A stretch of 64,000 nt of DNA. Source: Podarcis pityusensis (lineage: Eukaryota). Below the pieces are notes generated by a model. The model was not told where the DNA came from. It saw nothing but the letters and a program-made list of their open reading frames with translations, and ran no database searches. The stretch lies in the NCBI GenBank assembly GCA_964106645.2, contig OZ067039.1. One strand, 5' to 3'. Position numbers and translations under genes: made by a program. This document shows, one piece after another, positions 15,589 to 63,304 of this stretch (positions are counted from its first letter, which is position 1; the number at the start of each line of letters is the position of its first letter).

Positions 15589-17145
15589 ATTTTAACATTA
15601 GGATACATGAAGAGGCTGGCTGAAGATCCTGGCTTGTTAGGAAGCAGTAAGCCATGCTCTGGGTTTGGATGTAATAGAGACATGCTACTCATGCAGAATA
15701 AATGATGATAAGCCAGCAACCCTGGCTTACCATGATGTGCAAATTTCATTTCTACTGTATATCTAAGCCAACAATCTGAAGGATCTGAAAGCAAGGACAA
15801 ATGTGCATAAGCACTCTTGCTTTTCCTTAATTTAAACATTTTCCTATGCTGTGAATTCTGATCCCACCTTCAGATTACCTTGTTCTAGTATGCCTATATT
15901 GTTATAAGCAACTGGCACTAATTTTTATTTAAAATAAATGGCTTGTTCTACACTTACCCAACCAATCCATTCATCCATATACCTGCCCACACACTTCTTC
16001 CCAGGTGTAACCCTGGAATAAACTACAGGAATAATATCCCTCTATACTTTCTCTCTAACTAATTGTAGAATTTACTTAATTTATTTCTTCTGTACTGTAG
16101 TGCCATTTTTGTACCTTCAAGTGCTGTTTCAGTTGTTTTTCATATATCCTAAATGTGCTTTGCAGAAAGCATTTTTAGGGCTGCCTTATGACCTAATTCA
16201 CCTACACAGAAAATATTGCACTCCCTTTACACACATATACTTAGCACCAAACTAAATGAAATGTAAGGCATCCCATCCTGCTGATACCATATAAAAAAGC
16301 ACAAAGCTGGCAATATGTCTTATAAATTGTGCTGGTACTTTCTCAGACAGATATAAGTGGAAGGAAAATTTGCCTTCCCATAGTATTTCATGTTGCTGTT
16401 ACTAATTCTGGGTCATTATTGCTGAACTGGAAACAACCGCAGAATATTGAGAAATCCAGGTCACAGGGAGGAATTCAACATCATGCTATTTTGATCGTTC
16501 CATCAGCTCCAGCGTTTCTGCTTACCAGATGGAACAAGCACCCTCTTCTCCTCCCTGCACACTGGTCTGGGGGAATCTTCTGATCCTCCAAAGTGGATTG
16601 GGGGAGGAGACACACAGGGAGAGGAGAGAGGAGGGAAGTCCCATTGCACTAGTGGGAGCCCTTGGGTTGGCTTCTGGTAGTTCACCAGGTTATATGAATC
16701 TGGGCCACAGTTTCCACTAATATAATTCAATGGTTTGGTTTTTCTCTGTTTGCTAACAATGCACCATTGCTAGTTATATATCACACACACATAATTAATC
16801 ATACATGTATAGTCAATAAGCAAAGGCAGCAATTATTAATTATCCTTAAATATTACAAGTAAAATACTGAAAAATGCATTAGGTAGGTTAAACATCAAAG
16901 TTTGGTTTCATGGCAGGATTCAGCATCATTTGGCCAATTAAAAATAATAATAATGGAGGGACTCATCAATTCAGTGCCACACGGAACCATGACACCACAG
17001 CTCATTAACAAACCACGAAGGAGTGCTTAGAATGCAGAAGGAAGGGTTGGAATTGAAGCAATAGTGGATGGGCATAAACTGTCAGCTATGTATTAAGGCC
17101 TAAACAACACCCATCCACCCACCTACAATTAAGGTCACACAGCAC

Positions 17146-17587
17146 TAGGGATGCTTGAATCTGTCAATTTCAGAATCTCGCAGTTTCTCATTTTTCCAAT
17201 CAATAGGTGATTGATATCACCTGTATTGATTGGAAAAATGAGAAACTGAGAGATTCTGAAATTGACAGATTATATATATATCTATATCTATATCTATATA
17301 TATATAAAATTCATCAACATTATATGCTACTTTCTCCTAATATACACATTTCTTTATTGTATGCAATTTTGCCTTATACAAACATTTGTGTTTGTGATTT
17401 TCATTAATATATGTGTTTTTATGCCATTTTGTATGCACTGCATGGCTGCGGAATTGCACTACAAAATTTGGAGAAGTGTGAATTTTGAAGGGCGGCCGTA
17501 TTTCACTTCACTTCTTCTTTCAAAAAGTGCAAATCATGTAAAATTACATTTAAATGCAAATTGAAATGGAATCCATCCCAGTTCCTC
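17146..17587. mobile_element. Probable diverged hAT-like non-autonomous element with an internal fold-back rearrangement
   Basis: Begins tagggatg (an Ac-like terminus). Flanks cacagcac / tccagcac match at 6 of 8 positions. Contains a hairpin with 54-bp arms. Confidence 0.45.
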
Positions 17588-18137
17588 TCCAGCACCTTAT
17601 CCTCCTGCATGAGTGCTTCAACAAACACACCCAATCAACTGAATATGTCAACTAACTTGCTGCACACAATGCTTACTTATAAAGTTATCATCAATGTTTT
17701 ATGTTCTTGTGCAGAAAATGCAGAATTTGCAATATAAACACTGGGGGGAGGAATCAAACATATGAATCAGTACAAAGAGGCAGGAAATAATAATTAAAGT
17801 AAATACACATGATAAAGCAATCACGTTTGCACTGGGAAGCCTAATTACAGTGGTGCATACACCATCTACTTCAATGACCAATCTAAACCCTTCATTTAAA
17901 AAACCTGAAACAAATAGCAATCCTGTTCAGCAGCAGAAAAGGATAAGGAATTGATAGTAATCCTCATGCTCCTTGCATGAACTCCAAAAGACATTTGAGT
18001 GAGCTGAAAATTGTCCATCAAACACACAAAATAAGTTCCTCTAATCCTTGTGCCACAAATTACTAATCCATCTGGAGAGCTAAATTTGTTTTGTGTGTTT
18101 ACAAGGATCTAAATGTCATCCGACACACAGACAACTA

Positions 18138-18341
<204 letters not shown>

Positions 18342-26630: not shown

Positions 26631-28799
26631 CTATACCTATTACAAGCCCTGAGAACATAAACTGTTTTTCAAACAATAGTTTCTAGTGGCTAGTGCCAGA
26701 ATCAGGCAATTCTAGCATCTAGCATCTATTCTGTTTTAATGCTTTTTTTTTTTTACAGTGGATGTAGTTCTTTTCCTTCTGGTTTGATTTTTTGACATCT
26801 CCCTCTGGCCCTGTAGCATATTTCCCATCTGTTCATACAGATGGCACATTCCAGCAAAGTCAAAGAAACTGGTGTCCCAACATTCCAATATATTATGCTA
26901 TACTTGTATGGGCATGTTGCAAAATACTGGGGAAAGGAAGCCATTTCAACTTTCTCAGGAAAATTAAAGAAGAAATCCAAATACAGAAAACTGATACTGT
27001 AGCTATATGGCTAACTACCCATCCCACCTGTTTCCTCCCGGTGGCCTTTTGTAACTAACATTAGAACAACAAGACTATCTTGTAAAGGGGCTTCCATTGG
27101 TTAGCCTCAAAGCCAAGCCATTTGTGACTTTCATCCATATTGGGAGTCTTCAGACTGCCTCTAAGCTTCAGTTAGACTCCCTGCCAAGGAGAAATCTGCA
27201 AGAAGACTTCTCCAGGTTTTGTCTCTTTGTAGATAGAGCTGGTATAGTTGGGCAAATGATTAAAAACGCAAGCTGATCTTCCCATTCCATGCTTGGCATT
27301 ATCATAAATATATAATGTGGACTTTGAGCTTTTCAAATAGAAGGACATTGGTAGCAGAAGCTCACACAAGGACTTCTGCTAGCACAAATGGGTTCCCCCC
27401 TCGTCCCCATTGCAATTGACTTGTGGGTGTTATGAGAAGCCCCATAACAGCACAAGGGGGGCGGCGGGGGGAGGAGAAGTGGGATTGTTGTACCCAGCAA
27501 GCTGAAAAGCTTCTGCTTTACAGAATAATTGCTATAGCAGTAAGTAGAATTCCTCCCAGTATAAATACTAAGAGCAGAATTCTAAGCTTGCTTTCTTAGC
27601 TGTCAGACCTGCTGCGTTTAATGGGACTTGGAATGCTTCAAGACAGGTGTTTCTTGTGGGATGGGTGCTTCTCATGCATGACTTTTTTCTTTTTCTTTTT
27701 TTGCGGTATCCACACAACATTGTTGGTACAAAAATGCCAGCCCGTATTCCACCCCCACACTTACACTTTATAAGAAATAAATTAAGTAAGTTTTTTAAAA
27801 AAGAGGAAGTCCTGTGGCCAACAACACATTTGCATTATTAAGCCCCCATATGGAAGTACCCTAATTCTCAAGCAACTGTGTTTGCAGTTGGAGCCTAAGT
27901 GTTATGATTTTCTCCCAAATATGGAATCCCACCAGGATGCAATCTGGTTTTAAAGTTAAGTTTCAGGAGACACTAATCGTCACATAAAGTAGCAATCAGT
28001 TCTCTAATGTTCTTGCATAAAGTTAGTCATCCCTCCTCCTTGATCACACATATTTGCCTCCTGCTGCCTTTAAAAAGGTGGGTTAGAAAACAGATTCCCG
28101 GTTTTCTTCTTCTTCAAACTCTATAAGACAAACCATAGAATGCCCACAGAAGCTCAGTTTCCAAAAACCCACTAGAACTTCATGGGTGACAAATGTTGAC
28201 TCATCATTTAAAACATGCCATAACACCATGGAAGCAAGAATAAGCTTGCTCTTCTGAAACAGTTCACATCACACAGAAGTGAGCATTTTCCTTTCTTTTC
28301 TCCAAGGGGACAAGTTTTTGTATGTAGGCAGTAAAGTTTGAGAGTTTAAAATTAGCGCATTTTATGACAGAACTAAGCATTCTGCAGCAAACAACGGTCT
28401 GGGAATCCAGGCTGTTGTTTCTCTGCAGTAAAGGATTTTTAGGGAACAAGCAGCATCTGGGTGGAAATGCTGAGCTGTTTCCCATCTTTTGTATGACCCC
28501 TCAATGCCACATTGTTCCCAGTCAGGGTTCTGAAATAGAAAACAGCAGGTGAGGGGAGGGTTAAGCATTCTACTTATTGCCACGTCTTCTCTACAAATCT
28601 CTATTCCCCACTCGTAACTTGCTTTACAATAAAAAAGCAAAAACTGAGATCTTAGGGCTGATCCTGACTTCTCTTGTTTAGTGGATCTGTTCTTGTTCAC
28701 TTTTAATTTCCTACCTGGAACCATCTCCAGAAAACCTGTGTTTCTTTGTCCACTCTTGGGTAGTGCTTAGCTTGATTTTTCTGAGTGTATCTGTCTTGC

Positions 28800-29470
28800 A
28801 AAAGGTATTTAAACATACCTTCTCAAAGAAACCAGAGGCCTTTCTCCTGGGCATAGTTGGCCAATTGGTACCAAAGAAGGATAGAACCTTTTTTATGTAT
28901 GCCACAACAGCAGCAAGAATACTCATTGCAAAGTATTGGAAGACACAAGATCTACCCACTCTGGAAGAATGGCAGATGAAGCTGATGGACTATATGGAAC
29001 TGGCAGAAATGACTGGCAGAATCCGAGACCAGGGAGAAGAGTCGGTGGAAGAAGACTGGAAGAAATTTAAAGACTATTTACAGAAATATTGTAAAATTAA
29101 GGAATTTTAGAAGGATGTTGGATAGAAACTAAGTGGTTTCCAGCTGTAATGCTTTAAGAGATACGAAAAATGGTTTATAAATGGGTAAAAGCTTAATGGT
29201 AAGGATTTGCTGAACTAACAAACTGAACTGGAATACAAAAAAGGGAGGTACGTGGAGGTCCGGGGAAATAAGTGTAAGGAAGATATGTTATGGAAAATTA
29301 ACGTGTTTTTAACTGTTTTTATTTTGTATGTTTCTTTTTATTCTTCATTTTTTTGTTATATCTTAAAAACTTTATTCTTTTTTTCTGTATTTTGTATTGT
29401 CTTGTATTTTTATCTTTTGTTTTTGTATTCTTTGAAACTTTAATAAATATCTTTTTTTTTTTAAAAAAAA
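28800..29470 (+). mobile_element. 5'-truncated L1-clade LINE (ORF2 C-terminus, 3' UTR and tail)
   Basis: Open frame ...AARILIAKYWKTQDLPTLEEWQMKLMDYMELAEMT...WKKFKDYL, stop at 29110. AATAAA followed by a T/A tail. Perfect 17-bp TSD gagtgtatctgtcttgc (28783-28799, 29471-29487). Confidence 0.92.
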
Positions 29471-30750
29471 GAGTGTATCTGTCTTGCTCCACCACCATCT
29501 GTGCTTGCCAGGACTCAGAGGGACTGTTCCTAAGAGGGGTGGTTAAGGGTGTTCTAGGTTGTCAGGACTCCTTTTACTCCTCCTCCCATGTTTTTAAGAG
29601 GAGTCCTTAAGGGCACTGTGGGCTTCTGAGTCATTGGTACTTCCTCTTCCCTCTCCCTTCTCTGAAGACACTGGGTCCTTTTATTTTTTAGAGGACCAGT
29701 TTTGTGATTATGCAGAGATGTGATAAAATGAGAACAGAGGTATGAGCTGATTTATTTATTTTTTGACGGGGTCATTTGGAAAAGGAGGGGGGAAACCAGG
29801 CAATAATAACTGGAAGCATGCAGTTCAACCTTTTGGAACTCTAATAAAAACTGGCAGGGGGACAGGTGCATGGAAAGAAAGGGAGGAGAGGAGATGCCTC
29901 ACCTCTAGATACAGGAGAAGCAAAGTATAGATGGGCCCTTAGATTTTAAAAACAACACTTGACAGCTCTGAAATATTCTACCACAGCTGTAATTATGATG
30001 GCCTTCCAACTTCATCATCTTTATACTGATGGAAGCTCAGTTGCTACAAATATACTTTATTTTGATGTGGATATAAGCTGTTTGGAAAACTCACTTGCAA
30101 CACGAAAAGGTCAAAAATTAAAAGATGGTAAGGTGGTGTCTCATGTACAATGTAGATGTTAAAATGAATTCTTACCTTTTAAATGTTTACAATATACTAG
30201 TGCAGGAAAACTAGTATTTCAGAAATATGCTGCAGCAGTGCAGCTAAAGTCAAGAAGGTAAGCAGGGCATTTTTTCAAAGGTTAAGCACATATCTTTCAA
30301 ACACACATGTAATCAAGCACATGTTTTCTGGCAAAAAACCCTGCTGTATTGTCTGTGCTTAAAGTAGCTGACTTTTTCACAAAGGCATACACTAACAGTA
30401 TATGATCCACTTTTCACAGTTCAGTGTTTCCTTGTTAAAAGCTACATGGCTAAGTCTGCTTATCAAGGAATATGTCTGATTGAATTCAGTGAAACTAACT
30501 TTCAGGTAAACATGCACACCACTGGACTGTTCTGTCACATATCAACTCTACCAAAGTTGCATTCCAGAAACCTCCCTTCTCTTCTTTCTTTGTTGCATGT
30601 GTTTGTATAAAACTCAGTATCTCTTAAAGTCTCTTAAAGTACTTAAGACGGGTGGGCAAGTCCAAAATCACCTGGAACTGAAACTATGGAATGCTGGAAA
30701 ATAAAGGAAAAAACAAATCTTAGCTTTAGATATTAAATTATGGCATTTTA

Positions 30751-31131
<381 letters not shown>

Positions 31132-32788: not shown

Positions 32789-33271
32789 AAAAAAATAAAA
32801 ATTGTCTAGCAGCACCTTAGAGACCAACTAAGTTTGTTCTTGGTATGAGCTTTTGTGTGCATGCACACTTCTTCAGATACACTGAAACAGAAGTCACCAG
32901 ACCTTTATATATAGTGAGAGGGTGTGGAGGGGTATTACTCAGAAGGGTGGTAGGAATGGGTGATTGGCTGATAGGTGTGGTAAACCTGTTGATGACTGTT
33001 AACGACTGCAATTGGTCTTACAGGAAAAAGCAAGGGGTGAGATGGCCAAAAATAGCTTTATCATGTACAATGAGATAAGAATCCACTGTCTCTATTCAGA
33101 CCAGGTTTCTCCATAGTTTTAAGTTTGGTAATAAGTTGTAATTCAGCAACTTCTCTTTCCAGTCTATTTCTGTAAAAAAATTTTTTTAATATGACAGCTA
33201 CTTTGAGATCTTGTATAGAATGTCCTGGGAGATTGAAGTATTCTCCTACTGGTTTCTCTGTCTTGTGTCCT
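32789..33271 (-). mobile_element. Penelope-like element 3' fragment (GIY-YIG C-terminus plus pLTR/3' region)
   Basis: Minus strand translates, with one frameshift, to GHKTEKPVGEYFNLPGHSIQDLKVAVI...RLEREVAELQLITKLKTMEKPGLNRDSGFLSH, typical of the PLE endonuclease end. It is followed by a minimal hammerhead motif. Confidence 0.85.
32843..32880 (-). ncRNA. Degenerate minimal (helix III-less) PLE-type hammerhead motif
   Basis: Minus strand GUAU-CUGAAGA-A-GUGUG caug CACAC-AAAA-GCUC-AUAC. The GAAA box reads AAAA (position 32854). Confidence 0.65.
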
Positions 33272-50430: not shown

Positions 50431-50991
50431 ATGATAGTGCTATATTTGCAGTGCTTTAACAAAGAAAAAGAAAAACCAAACTACAGTGAACATAAACTAA
50501 TTTGAAACCATGATCGGAGATTTGGGCAATTTTTAGTAAGAATATCAGTGATGAGATAAATGTTTGCCACAGTTAAAACTAAAGGGGGGGAGAAGTGCAC
50601 AGGAACAAGTCTGTGAGTTCTGTATCACCAAACTATGGTTCTGTGACTAGGCAGTGTTTTATCTTCGCTAGAGAGTGAAGGGTTATTCATATTTCTATTT
50701 ACTGTGACTCCAGTGTGCTCCTGTTGTTGTTTGTCTTAAACTAGGTTCACATCAATCTGCATCCTGTGGCTTTTAGAGGAATACTGCTATTTGATGCACT
50801 TTCTCTCAAACCAGCTTCCACCTGATTAAAAAATGGAAGCCGCCATTCCATTGTAGTGTGAAAATATGTATTATGATGATCAGGATGGTTTTGTGAATGC
50901 ACGGATGACAGAATGTGCACAGATGAAAGTGTCACTGGTTTAGGGAATGAAATCATGGGGAGAAATCATCCCTGCCCTGATATGAACAGTT

Positions 50992-51505
50992 ATTAAATAT
51001 ACCAAGAAAAAATCACAAATATACCAAGAAAAAAGCAAAAAAAATATGTCCAGATTCGTCGTAGAGGTCTTGAGAAATGTAGAAAATAACAGGATATATT
51101 TATCTGAAAGTCTTCAAACTTACACGACCCTTTAAAAATTAGCTGATGAAGGTGAATACATCGAAACAGGGCCCTGTCCTGGTTTCTAATCCATAACAGA
51201 CTTCTGACTTCTGCTCAGTGATTGAAACTAAGACCTCCACGACGAATCTGGACTAACATGAATTTATCTTGACTCATAAACTCTTATTTCTAATTCTGTA
51301 ATGAATTATTGTGTTATACATATTTTTATGAGTTTGAGTCTGTAATCTCTGTTAGAGTTTGTAATCTCTATTTGAGTTTGTAATCCTTGTCAGAATACAT
51401 ACTTTTGAATGGATTAGTTTTTGTTACTATTGACTATTGATTTGCGAGTAGGGACCACTCCCACTACTGAAACTTACATTGGCCTGAGTTCTTGGTGTGC
51501 TTTCC
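50992..51505 (+). mobile_element. Non-autonomous hammerhead-bearing retroelement (retrozyme or Penelope-like), 514 bp
   Basis: Flanked by a 17-bp direct repeat, ccctgatatgaacagtt (50975-50991) / ccccgatatgaacagtt (51506-51522). Internal 24-bp inverted repeat (51048-51071 / 51230-51253), hammerhead at 51136-51185, no ORF in the track. Confidence 0.7.
51136..51185 (+). ncRNA. Type I hammerhead ribozyme, predicted cleavage after GUC at C51178
   Basis: AAAUUAG (helix I) - CUGAUGA - A - GGUG aaua CAUC (helix II) - GAAA - CAGGGCCCUG (helix III, palindromic) - UC^ - CUGGUUU (helix I'). All conserved core nucleotides are present and all three helices pair. Confidence 0.8.
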
Positions 51506-51984
51506 CCCCGATATGAACAGTTGCAGGAGAAACTGACTTAGAGACACAGCGGGGGTGGTGATGGTGTTGGTGGTGGGGAGACAGCAATGACCTTGCAGCA
51601 TTCCAAGAAACTAATGTGAACACATAGAATCTGCTTTGCCCTTTCATACTTTTTTTTTTAATATTTAACAGAGAAAAATCACCAGAAAATAAGAGAACCT
51701 TATCATGCTTCCCTGTTTATTCCTTAAAGCATACAGAATGAACCTTAATGCAGAAAACAGGATAAAGATCAAGACAGGGTCAGTTTCTCCCTACTGATCT
51801 GAGCTAGTTACCCTAGGATGCTAACACACTTGCTCCGAGACCTAAACACACTTTTTTAAAAAAGTGTATGCTTAAATGTATACAGCAGGGAAACCTAATG
51901 TTGTTTCCTTGGAAAAGCAAAGTGTCATCAACAGTTTGATTCTCCACATTCCTCCAGTTCAAACAATGACTGAGTTTGTACATA

Positions 51985-52226
51985 CAGTGGTACCTCAGGT
52001 TACATACGCTTCAGGTTACATACGCTTCAGGTTACACACTCTGCTAACCCAGAAATAGTGTTTCAGGTTAAGAACTTTGCTTCAGGATAAGAACAGAAAT
52101 CGGGCTCCGGCGGCACGGCGGCAGCAGGAGGCCCCATTAGCTAAAGTGGCGCTTTAGGTTAAGAACAGTTTCAGGTTAAGAACAGACCTGCGGAACGAAT
52201 TAAGTACTTAACCTGAGGTTCCACTG
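51985..52226 (+). mobile_element. pogo/Tigger-type MITE, copy C (242 bp)
   Basis: TIRs cagtggtacctcaggtta / taacctgaggttccactg, TA TSD. Confidence 0.88.
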
Positions 52227-52374
52227 TAATGCTGAACCATTCCATGGCTAAGATTGAACAAACAAGCATGCTTTCCTCCTTCCCCACCCTTCTTCTTGCT
52301 ACACTACCCAGATCTAAGCTTGTGGTTTGTCTCTCTCCAGAAGAACCATGAACAGTAAACTCAAGAACCAACTT

Positions 52375-63049: not shown

Positions 63050-63304
<255 letters not shown>

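What the first reader, a model, noticed from the sequence alone, without database searches (positions are those of the whole stretch)
50975..51522. Intact hammerhead ribozyme in a TSD-flanked, non-coding 514-bp insertion: candidate lizard retrozyme or non-autonomous Penelope family
Seen: a full type-I hammerhead on + at 51136-51185. Helix I is AAAUUAG/CUGGUUU (two G-U pairs), followed by CUGAUGA plus an extra A, helix II GGUG-aaua-CAUC, GAAA, the self-complementary ACAGGGCCCUGU helix III and a GUC cleavage triplet. The 514-bp block is bounded by a 17-bp direct repeat whose single mismatch is a CpG-type change, and it has no ORF. Established: type-I hammerheads with short palindromic helix III occur in Penelope-like element pLTRs and in non-autonomous retrozymes, often acting as dimers or producing circular RNAs. 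Inference: this is a self-cleaving, retrotransposed, non-autonomous RNA element mobilised in trans. Its sequence differs from the Penelope family at 32.8 kb, so it may be an uncatalogued squamate family.
Basis: partly seen in the sequence, partly recalled or inferred. Interest (0 to 1): 0.88.

Follow-up and report, generated by a model that had tools for sequence, protein, structure and literature searches.

The report
Solitary Penelope-type hammerhead insert in lizard intron
A young, non-coding 514-bp retro-insertion in an intron of the lizard GABRB2 gene carries an intact-looking hammerhead ribozyme of the kind typical of Penelope-like retroelements. This is an ordinary member of a known class, sits antisense to the gene, and is probably idle as a single copy.

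Summary
A complete type-I hammerhead motif lies at 51136-51185 (+), inside a 514-bp ORF-free block flanked by a 16/17 direct repeat.

It is the only such motif in the window. Of 1217 shuffled windows, one gave a hit of equal helix lengths, and none had its bulged base with a G10.1-C11.1 pair or its palindromic helix III.

No Rfam hammerhead model scores it. The "extra A" after CUGAUGA is not a defect: Cervera and de la Pena 2014 name it, the G10.1-C11.1 pair and a palindromic helix III as hallmarks of Penelope-like-element (PLE) hammerheads.

Folding favours a two-copy "double hammerhead" (-30.3 against a dimer optimum of -32.7 kcal/mol). The monomer fold has under 0.2% of the ensemble.

New here:
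- A discrete 24-bp inverted repeat brackets the ribozyme.
- CpG content suggests a young insertion.
- The element lies in a GABRB2 intron, antisense to the gene.

There is one unit and one ribozyme, so it fails the tandem criterion for a retrozyme. PLE hammerheads and retrozymes are already reported in reptiles.

I could retrieve no other copy, so family size, covariation and any autonomous partner are untested. The scan holds 36 hammerhead notes in its index, those shown all from this genome; none is shown to be this family.

Verdict: new member of a known kind, modest interest.

The parts
50975..50991 (.). Left copy of the target-site duplication, CCCTGATATGAACAGTT
   Evidence: the repeat finder family D3, 16/17 identical to 51506-51522
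50992..51505 (+). The 514-bp inserted block. It is non-coding with 33.7% G+C. CpG observed/expected is 0.48, against 0.20 in the flanks. It has no poly(A) at either end.
   Evidence: no second copy in the window
50995..51041 (+). A-rich 22-mer repeated 2.1 times at the 5' end of the block
51048..51071 (+). Left arm of a discrete 24-nt inverted repeat (GTCCAGATTCGTCGTAGAGGTCTT)
   Evidence: the repeat finder I1, 96% complementary, 158 nt between the arms. The 206-nt stretch it closes folds with z = -6.0. The repeat does not continue beyond 24 nt.
51136..51185 (+). Type-I hammerhead motif. Helix I is 51136-51142 / 51179-51185. CUGAUGA is at 51143-51149 and the bulged A at 51150. Helix II with its loop is 51151-51162. 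GAA is at 51163-51165. The palindromic helix III is 51166-51177. The predicted cut is after C51178.
   Evidence: not reported by Rfam models
51230..51253 (+). Right arm of the 24-nt inverted repeat
51332..51385 (+). 19-mer (GTTTGAGTTTGTAATCTCT) repeated 2.8 times in the AT-rich 3' part
51506..51522 (.). Right copy of the target-site duplication, CCCCGATATGAACAGTT

Best explanation
This is a solitary, fairly young copy of a non-coding retroelement of the Penelope-like element (PLE) lineage. It is either a 5'-truncated terminal (pLTR-type) piece of a PLE or a single unit of a PLE-dependent non-autonomous family.

How it probably arrived (inferred): a PLE reverse transcriptase with its GIY-YIG endonuclease copied it into a staggered break. 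That would leave a 17-bp target-site duplication and no poly(A) tail.

What it carries: a PLE-type type-I hammerhead, with a bulged base between A9 and G10.1, a G10.1-C11.1 pair and a palindromic helix III. This design is predicted to cleave only when two copies pair through the 12-nt palindrome (a double hammerhead), or with help from the element's protein.

What it does here (inferred): with a single unit, on the strand antisense to the host gene GABRB2, the ribozyme is most likely idle and the insertion neutral.

Shown: the motif, the duplication, the absence of ORFs and of a tail, the inverted repeat, the intron position and strand, and the fold predictions. Inferred: the PLE machinery, the dimer mode, and the lack of activity.
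For: - The motif is complete and unique in the window, and equally good matches are very rare in shuffles.
- All three PLE-hammerhead hallmarks not forced by a core search are present: the unpaired base after A9, G10.1-C11.1 and a palindromic helix III (sequence; criteria in PMC4209133).
- The undoubted PLE fragment in the same window (about 32842-32880, minus strand) has the same bulged A after CUGAAGA.
- A natural active hammerhead, CChMVd(+), has an extra A at the same place with only a moderate loss of rate (PMC3705267).
- The double-hammerhead structure scores -30.3 kcal/mol, against a dimer optimum of -32.7. The monomer hammerhead fold scores -4.8 against -9.8, and its helices I and III hold under 0.2% of the ensemble.
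- The insertion has a 16/17 TSD, no poly(A), no tRNA-like head and no B box. L1-type inserts in the same window do end in poly(A).
- CpG observed/expected is 0.48, and 0.72 in the core, against 0.20 in the flanks.
- Most PLE hammerheads occur as single motifs in truncated copies, and most PLE insertions are 5'-truncated.
- GABRB2 exons lie on the minus strand on both sides of the element.
Against: - No Rfam hammerhead model scores the motif, even at E<=10 on 81 nt.
- No second copy could be retrieved, so there is no copy number, consensus, covariation or autonomous partner.
- Helix II (4 bp) and helix I (7 bp) have canonical sizes. They are not the long helix II and short helix I described for PLE minimal hammerheads.
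- The predicted cut site lies 327 nt from the 3' end. In Anolis Poseidon it is about 90 nt from the end, and in the PLE fragment at 32.8 kb about 40 nt.
- No RT or GIY-YIG coding remnant lies nearby.
- The 24-bp inverted repeat and the A-rich 5' end are not explained by this reading.
Confidence: 0.6

Rival explanations
1. It is a true non-LTR retrozyme. Under this reading the family exists elsewhere as tandem arrays whose transcripts self-cleave at successive hammerheads, circularise and are copied back into DNA. This locus would be a one-unit offspring, perhaps copied from a circle, which would explain why the ribozyme is unbroken in the middle of the insert.
For: - The element is non-coding, has low G+C (33.7%) and a TSD longer than 4 bp. 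Its helix I and II sizes are close to canonical type I.
- Its size lies within the 51-972 bp range reported for retrozyme consensus sequences.
- Monomeric derivatives are common, and retrozymes were found in 4 of 5 reptiles.
- The intact internal hammerhead fits a circular or multimeric template (inference).
Against: - There is one unit and one hammerhead at this locus, no tandem copy and no terminal redundancy. The operational criterion of at least two consecutive units is therefore not met.
- The bulged base is described for PLE minimal hammerheads, and retrozyme hammerheads are described as canonical.
- No RNA data could be obtained.
Confidence: 0.2
2. The hammerhead-like motif is a chance or decayed resemblance inside an unrelated, unclassified insertion, such as an unknown non-LTR-dependent element or filler DNA captured at a repaired break. 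It has never acted as a ribozyme.
For: - Rfam models do not score it.
- The 50-nt stretch folds no better than shuffles (z = -0.37), and not as a hammerhead.
- Loose descriptor hits arise at about 0.04 per 64 kb, which would be about a thousand in a genome of some 28,000 such windows. That genome size is my assumption.
- Nothing else in the element is diagnostic of a PLE.
Against: - Only one shuffle hit in 1217 windows matched its helix lengths. None had the bulge with G10.1-C11.1, and none had the palindromic helix III.
- These extra features are exactly those reported for PLE hammerheads.
- The motif sits in a tail-less TSD-flanked insert, in a genome where the scan holds 36 hammerhead notes, those shown mostly PLE-linked (unchecked notes).
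Confidence: 0.15
3. It is a host-exapted ribozyme or structured RNA that acts on GABRB2 expression.
For: It lies in a GABRB2 intron, and a strongly folding 206-nt domain is closed by the 24-bp stem.
Against: - The hammerhead strand is antisense to the gene, so the pre-mRNA does not contain it.
- The insertion looks young.
- No conservation data exist.
Confidence: 0.03

Closest known systems
Minimal and variant hammerheads of Penelope-like elements (Cervera and de la Pena 2014, PMC4209133)
   Same: Type I. It has an unpaired base between A9 and G10.1, a G10.1-C11.1 pair and a palindromic helix III, and is predicted to depend on dimers. It occurs as a single motif in a short non-coding insert.
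   Different: Helix II has 4 bp, not 6-8, and helix I has 7 bp, not 4-5. Helix III is a real 4-bp stem with a GGCC loop rather than 0-2 bp. No adjacent RT/GIY-YIG ORF or second pLTR is present.
Poseidon_Ac (PAc) of Anolis carolinensis (Frangieh et al. 2024, PMC11167929)
   Same: A squamate PLE with a hammerhead close to where insertions end. That ribozyme needs the element's protein to cleave and is dispensable for insertion in vitro. Insertions have no poly(A).
   Different: In PAc the ribozyme overlaps the ORF start, and reverse transcription starts about 90 nt downstream of the cut. Here 327 nt follow the cut and no ORF starts there: the ATG inside the core opens only 16 codons.
Metazoan non-LTR retrozymes (Cervera and de la Pena 2020, PMC7229834; Li, Clavereau and Pollet 2026 preprint)
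   Same: Non-coding, low G+C, type-I hammerhead, TSD longer than 4 bp, and a unit size within the reported range. Monomer offspring are described. The retrozymes are proposed to derive from PLE pLTRs.
   Different: The defining tandem arrangement with a hammerhead in each unit is absent at this locus. Circular RNA was not tested.
CChMVd (+) hammerhead (De la Pena and Flores 2001, as summarised in PMC3705267)
   Same: An extra A between A9 and G10.1 in an active natural hammerhead
   Different: It is a type III viroid ribozyme and is unrelated in context.

Membership tests
Hammerhead ribozyme, type I | Conserved core: C3 U4 G5 A6 N7 G8 A9, G12 A13 A14, A15.1-U16.1, and H17 that is not G | tested here: met
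   The sequence at 51143-51178 carries every core position, with one extra A at 51150.
Hammerhead ribozyme, type I | Three helices around the core, with helix I open and helices II and III closed by loops | tested here: met
   Helices I, II and III have 7, 4 and 4 bp in my descriptor scan.
Hammerhead ribozyme, type I | Match to the curated Rfam hammerhead covariance models | tested here: not met
   No hammerhead family was listed at gathering score or at E<=10 on 701 nt and 81 nt.
Hammerhead ribozyme, type I | The hammerhead fold is the favoured fold of the RNA | tested here: inconclusive
   The monomer hammerhead fold scores -4.8 against an optimum of -9.8 kcal/mol. The double hammerhead scores -30.3 against -32.7. 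Energy models ignore the tertiary contacts of the core.
Hammerhead ribozyme, type I | Site-specific self-cleavage | not testable with these tools
   This needs in vitro transcription of monomer and dimer constructs.
Hammerhead ribozyme, type I | Conservation and compensatory changes among related copies | not testable with these tools
   No other copy was found in the window, in metagenome or viral collections, through an ORF search, or in papers.
PLE-type hammerhead (Cervera and de la Pena 2014) | [quoted passage not shown] | tested here: met
   A51150; criterion
PLE-type hammerhead (Cervera and de la Pena 2014) | A G10.1-C11.1 pair | tested here: met
   G51151-C51162
PLE-type hammerhead (Cervera and de la Pena 2014) | Palindromic positions 15.2-16.2 and loop 3 | tested here: met
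   ACAGGGCCCUGU is a perfect palindrome. No shuffle hit had one.
PLE-type hammerhead (Cervera and de la Pena 2014) | A long helix II (6-8 bp) with a short helix I (4-5 bp) | tested here: not met
   Helix II has 4 bp and helix I has 7 bp.
Penelope-like element copy | An RT plus GIY-YIG ORF, or a second pLTR, at the locus | tested here: not met
   No ORF above 33 aa lies in the block. Neighbouring ORFs have no Pfam match. There is no direct or inverted second copy. Single truncated copies are, however, the usual state.
Penelope-like element copy | Sequence similarity to the terminus of an autonomous PLE of the same genome | not testable with these tools
   Only one PLE fragment is in the window, and it is unrelated. 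Neither the genome nor Repbase/Dfam was available.
Non-LTR retrozyme | A tandem array with at least two consecutive units, each with a complete hammerhead | tested here: not met
   There is one unit and one motif; criterion.
Non-LTR retrozyme | Non-coding, low G+C, and a TSD longer than 4 bp when present | tested here: met
   criteria
Non-LTR retrozyme | Expression as unit-length linear and circular RNA | not testable with these tools
L1- or CR1-mobilised SINE or retrocopy | A 3' poly(A) or microsatellite tail next to the TSD, and a tRNA-type head | tested here: not met
   No tail at either end, no tRNA-like fold and no B box in the block

The most novel reading that the evidence does not exclude
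The 514 bp represents an uncatalogued squamate family of PLE-dependent non-autonomous elements. In it a canonical-sized but PLE-bulged hammerhead is locked inside a 206-nt domain closed by a 24-bp long-range stem. That stem could act as the recognition or priming hairpin for the PLE enzyme, or as a clamp that keeps the ribozyme off until two units pair. If so, it would link the minimal PLE hammerheads to the canonical retrozyme hammerheads.
Probability: 0.15. Interest if true: 0.5.

Novelty: new member of a known kind. Interest (0 to 1): 0.3.

Why it matters
If the family proves abundant and conserved, it would add a squamate example in which the hammerhead has canonical helix sizes but keeps the PLE-specific bulge. 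That bears on the recent proposal that animal retrozymes descend from PLE terminal repeats.

The 24-bp clamp around the ribozyme would then be worth testing as a regulatory or enzyme-recognition element.

As a single locus it has no evident consequence for the host. It lies antisense in a GABRB2 intron and is predicted to be inactive on its own.

Tried and rejected
- **Rfam covariance models.** Three searches of decreasing span gave no hammerhead hit. I do not treat this as exclusion. PLE variants with a bulged base are, to my knowledge, poorly covered by these models, and I could not run a positive control.
- **Other copies or relatives.** All of these were blank:
  - BLAST of the block against the window;
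  - pattern scans of metagenome contigs and viral contigs;
  - a profile-free search with the 33-aa ORF that spans the motif against 1.8 billion representative proteins, which gave only one chance hit to a repetitive protein;
  - exact look-ups of the two flanking ORFs;
  - a full-text search for the motif's letters in papers, which gave only one unrelated primer match;
  - the scan's own index by sequence.
  
  None of these collections is expected to hold lizard DNA, so the blanks say little.
- **tRNA-derived SINE:** rejected.
- **L1-type retrocopy:** rejected, because there is no poly(A).
- **PLE head-to-head fold-back, or an inverted truncated copy, as the source of the inverted repeat:** rejected. 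Complementarity stops at 24 nt, and the outer ends are not inverted copies of each other.
- **A nested MITE bounded by the 24-bp arms:** considered. There is no matching flanking duplication (read), so I did not pursue it.

Full report
**What is there**

- Helix I is AAAUUAG, paired with CUGGUUU: 7 bp, two of them G-U.
- The core is CUGAUGA, followed by one extra A (51150).
- Helix II is GGUG/CAUC, closed by AAUA.
- GAA follows.
- Helix III lies within the perfect 12-nt palindrome ACAGGGCCCUGU, 4 bp plus a GGCC loop when folded on itself.
- The GUC triplet puts the predicted cut after C51178.

A descriptor scan of my own asked for CUGANGA, an optional extra base, helix II, GAAA, helix III with A15.1-U16.1, H17 and helix I. 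It finds this as the only match on either strand of the 64-kb window.

In 1217 dinucleotide-preserving shuffles of the window there were 49 loose matches. Only one had helices as long as here. None combined the extra base with a G10.1-C11.1 pair, and none had a palindromic helix III. The motif is therefore far beyond chance for the window. With its extra features it is unlikely to be chance even across a whole genome.

**The Rfam result**

No hammerhead family of Rfam 15 reports the motif. This held at gathering score on the window, at E<=10 on 701 nt and at E<=10 on 81 nt. This is real evidence against a textbook hammerhead, and I record it as a failed membership feature. I could not run a positive control with a known PLE hammerhead.

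**The extra A is a lineage mark**

Cervera and de la Pena (2014, PMC4209133) list features of hammerheads in Penelope-like elements (PLEs) that their search did not impose. [quoted passage not shown] All three are present here.

The one undoubted PLE fragment in the window carries a minimal hammerhead on the minus strand at about 32842-32880. It reads CUGAAGA-A-GUGUGCAUGCACAC-AAAA-GCUC. It has the same bulged A, and an A where G12 should be, through what looks like CpG decay.

An extra A at this very place is also tolerated in an active viroid hammerhead, with a moderate loss of rate (PMC3705267).

The helix sizes, however, are canonical: helix I has 7 bp and helix II 4 bp. They are not the long helix II and short helix I of PLE minimal motifs. 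The motif therefore sits between the two described forms.

**How it would work**

- As a monomer, the hammerhead fold scores -4.8 kcal/mol against an optimum of -9.8. In that optimum, CAGGGC pairs with GUCCUG and buries the cleavage site. Hammerhead helices I and III hold under 0.2% of the ensemble, and the 50-nt stretch folds no better than shuffles.
- As two copies, a double hammerhead with a 12-bp intermolecular helix III scores -30.3 kcal/mol. That is within 2.4 kcal/mol of the dimer optimum of -32.7, which contains the same 12-bp helix.
- This is the behaviour described for newt, axolotl and PLE hammerheads, which cleave poorly alone and better as dimers.
- In Anolis Poseidon the ribozyme cleaved only in the presence of the element's protein and was not needed for insertion in vitro (PMC11167929).

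With one unit at this locus, I infer that the ribozyme is idle here.

**The insertion**

- A 17-nt direct repeat (50975-50991 / 51506-51522) matches at 16 of 17 positions. The mismatch is TG against CG. It bounds a 514-bp block.
- The block has no ORF above 33 aa, no tRNA-like head, no B box and no poly(A) at either end.
- Two other TSD-flanked inserts in the same window do end in poly(A). The machinery here therefore differs from the L1 type, and a tail-less insertion with a long TSD fits a PLE. That PLE TSDs vary in length is from my own knowledge.
- CpG observed/expected is 0.48 for the block and 0.72 for its core, against 0.20 in 5 kb on either side. Together with the near-perfect TSD, this points to a fairly recent insertion.

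**New features**

- A discrete 24-nt inverted repeat (51048-51071 / 51230-51253, one mismatch) brackets the ribozyme. It closes a 206-nt domain that folds with z = -6.0.
- Complementarity does not continue beyond the 24 nt, inward or outward. The outer ends of the block are not inverted copies of each other. It is therefore not the head-to-head arrangement common in PLE insertions. Its role is unexplained.
- The block also has a 22-mer repeated twice at its A-rich 5' end and a 19-mer repeated about three times in its 3' part.

**Host context**

GABRB2 exons lie on the minus strand:
- 30769-30987, whose best matches among solved structures are beta-2 chains at E about 1e-46;
- near 63.1 kb;
- near 18.3 kb.

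This agrees with an earlier scan note that places a GABRB2 exon upstream of the window. The element thus lies in a GABRB2 intron, with the ribozyme antisense to the gene. The pre-mRNA does not contain the hammerhead strand.

**Classification**

The retrozyme label needs tandem units, each with a hammerhead. That is not met at this locus.

The data fit two readings, which I could not separate because no other copy was retrievable:
- a truncated terminal piece of a PLE, the usual fate of PLE insertions and the usual setting of single PLE hammerheads;
- a one-unit offspring of a PLE-dependent non-autonomous family.

Against a simple PLE terminus, the cut site lies 327 nt from the 3' end. In Anolis Poseidon the distance is about 90 nt, and in the fragment at 32.8 kb about 40 nt.

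**Novelty**

- PLE hammerheads were reported in turtles and snakes in 2014 and dissected in Anolis in 2024.
- Non-LTR retrozymes were found in four of five sampled reptiles in a 2026 preprint, which also argues that they derive from PLE pLTRs.
- The scan's index holds 36 hammerhead notes, and the ones it listed are all from this genome. Many describe short PLE-type inserts. These notes are unchecked, and none is shown to be the same family.

The finding is therefore a new member of a known kind. Whether the family is catalogued in Repbase or Dfam could not be checked.

**Limits**

The collections I could scan are not expected to hold lizard DNA, so their blanks carry little weight.

Noticed in passing
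window 32803-33260, minus strand; hammerhead at about 32842-32880: A fragment of a different Penelope-like family. It carries a minimal hammerhead (CUGAAGA, bulged A, helix II GUGUGCAUGCACAC, 1-bp helix III with a GC loop). The G12 position reads A, apparently through CpG decay on the plus strand, so this copy is dead.
   Followed up: partly
window 51985-52230: A separate short repeat about 460 bp to the right of the insert. Its ends are inverted copies (ACAGTGGTACCTCAGGTTA ... TAACCTGAGGTTCCACTGT). It holds a perfect 16-mer repeated 2.6 times (51995-52036) and a CpG-rich centre. It looks like a common lizard MITE or SINE-like element.
   Followed up: no
window 28782-29486 and 16939-18228: Two inserts flanked by 17-nt direct repeats (16 of 17 matching), each ending in poly(A) next to the right repeat. 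These are L1-type retropositions and serve as a contrast to the tail-less hammerhead insert.
   Followed up: partly
window 30769-30987, about 63140-63190 and about 18240-18320, all minus strand: GABRB2 coding exons. The window lies inside the gene, which is transcribed from the minus strand.
   Followed up: yes
window 51447-51468: A small stem-loop (AGUAGGGA-CCAC-UCCCACUACU, with a 2-nt bulge) lies about 37 nt from the 3' end of the insert. Its position recalls the AC-rich stem-loop at which the Anolis Poseidon enzyme starts reverse transcription. This is only a resemblance.
   Followed up: no
window 51146-51196: The AUG inside the CUGAUGA core opens only 16 codons before a stop. In Anolis Poseidon the element's ORF starts within the hammerhead; here no ORF follows.
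   Followed up: partly
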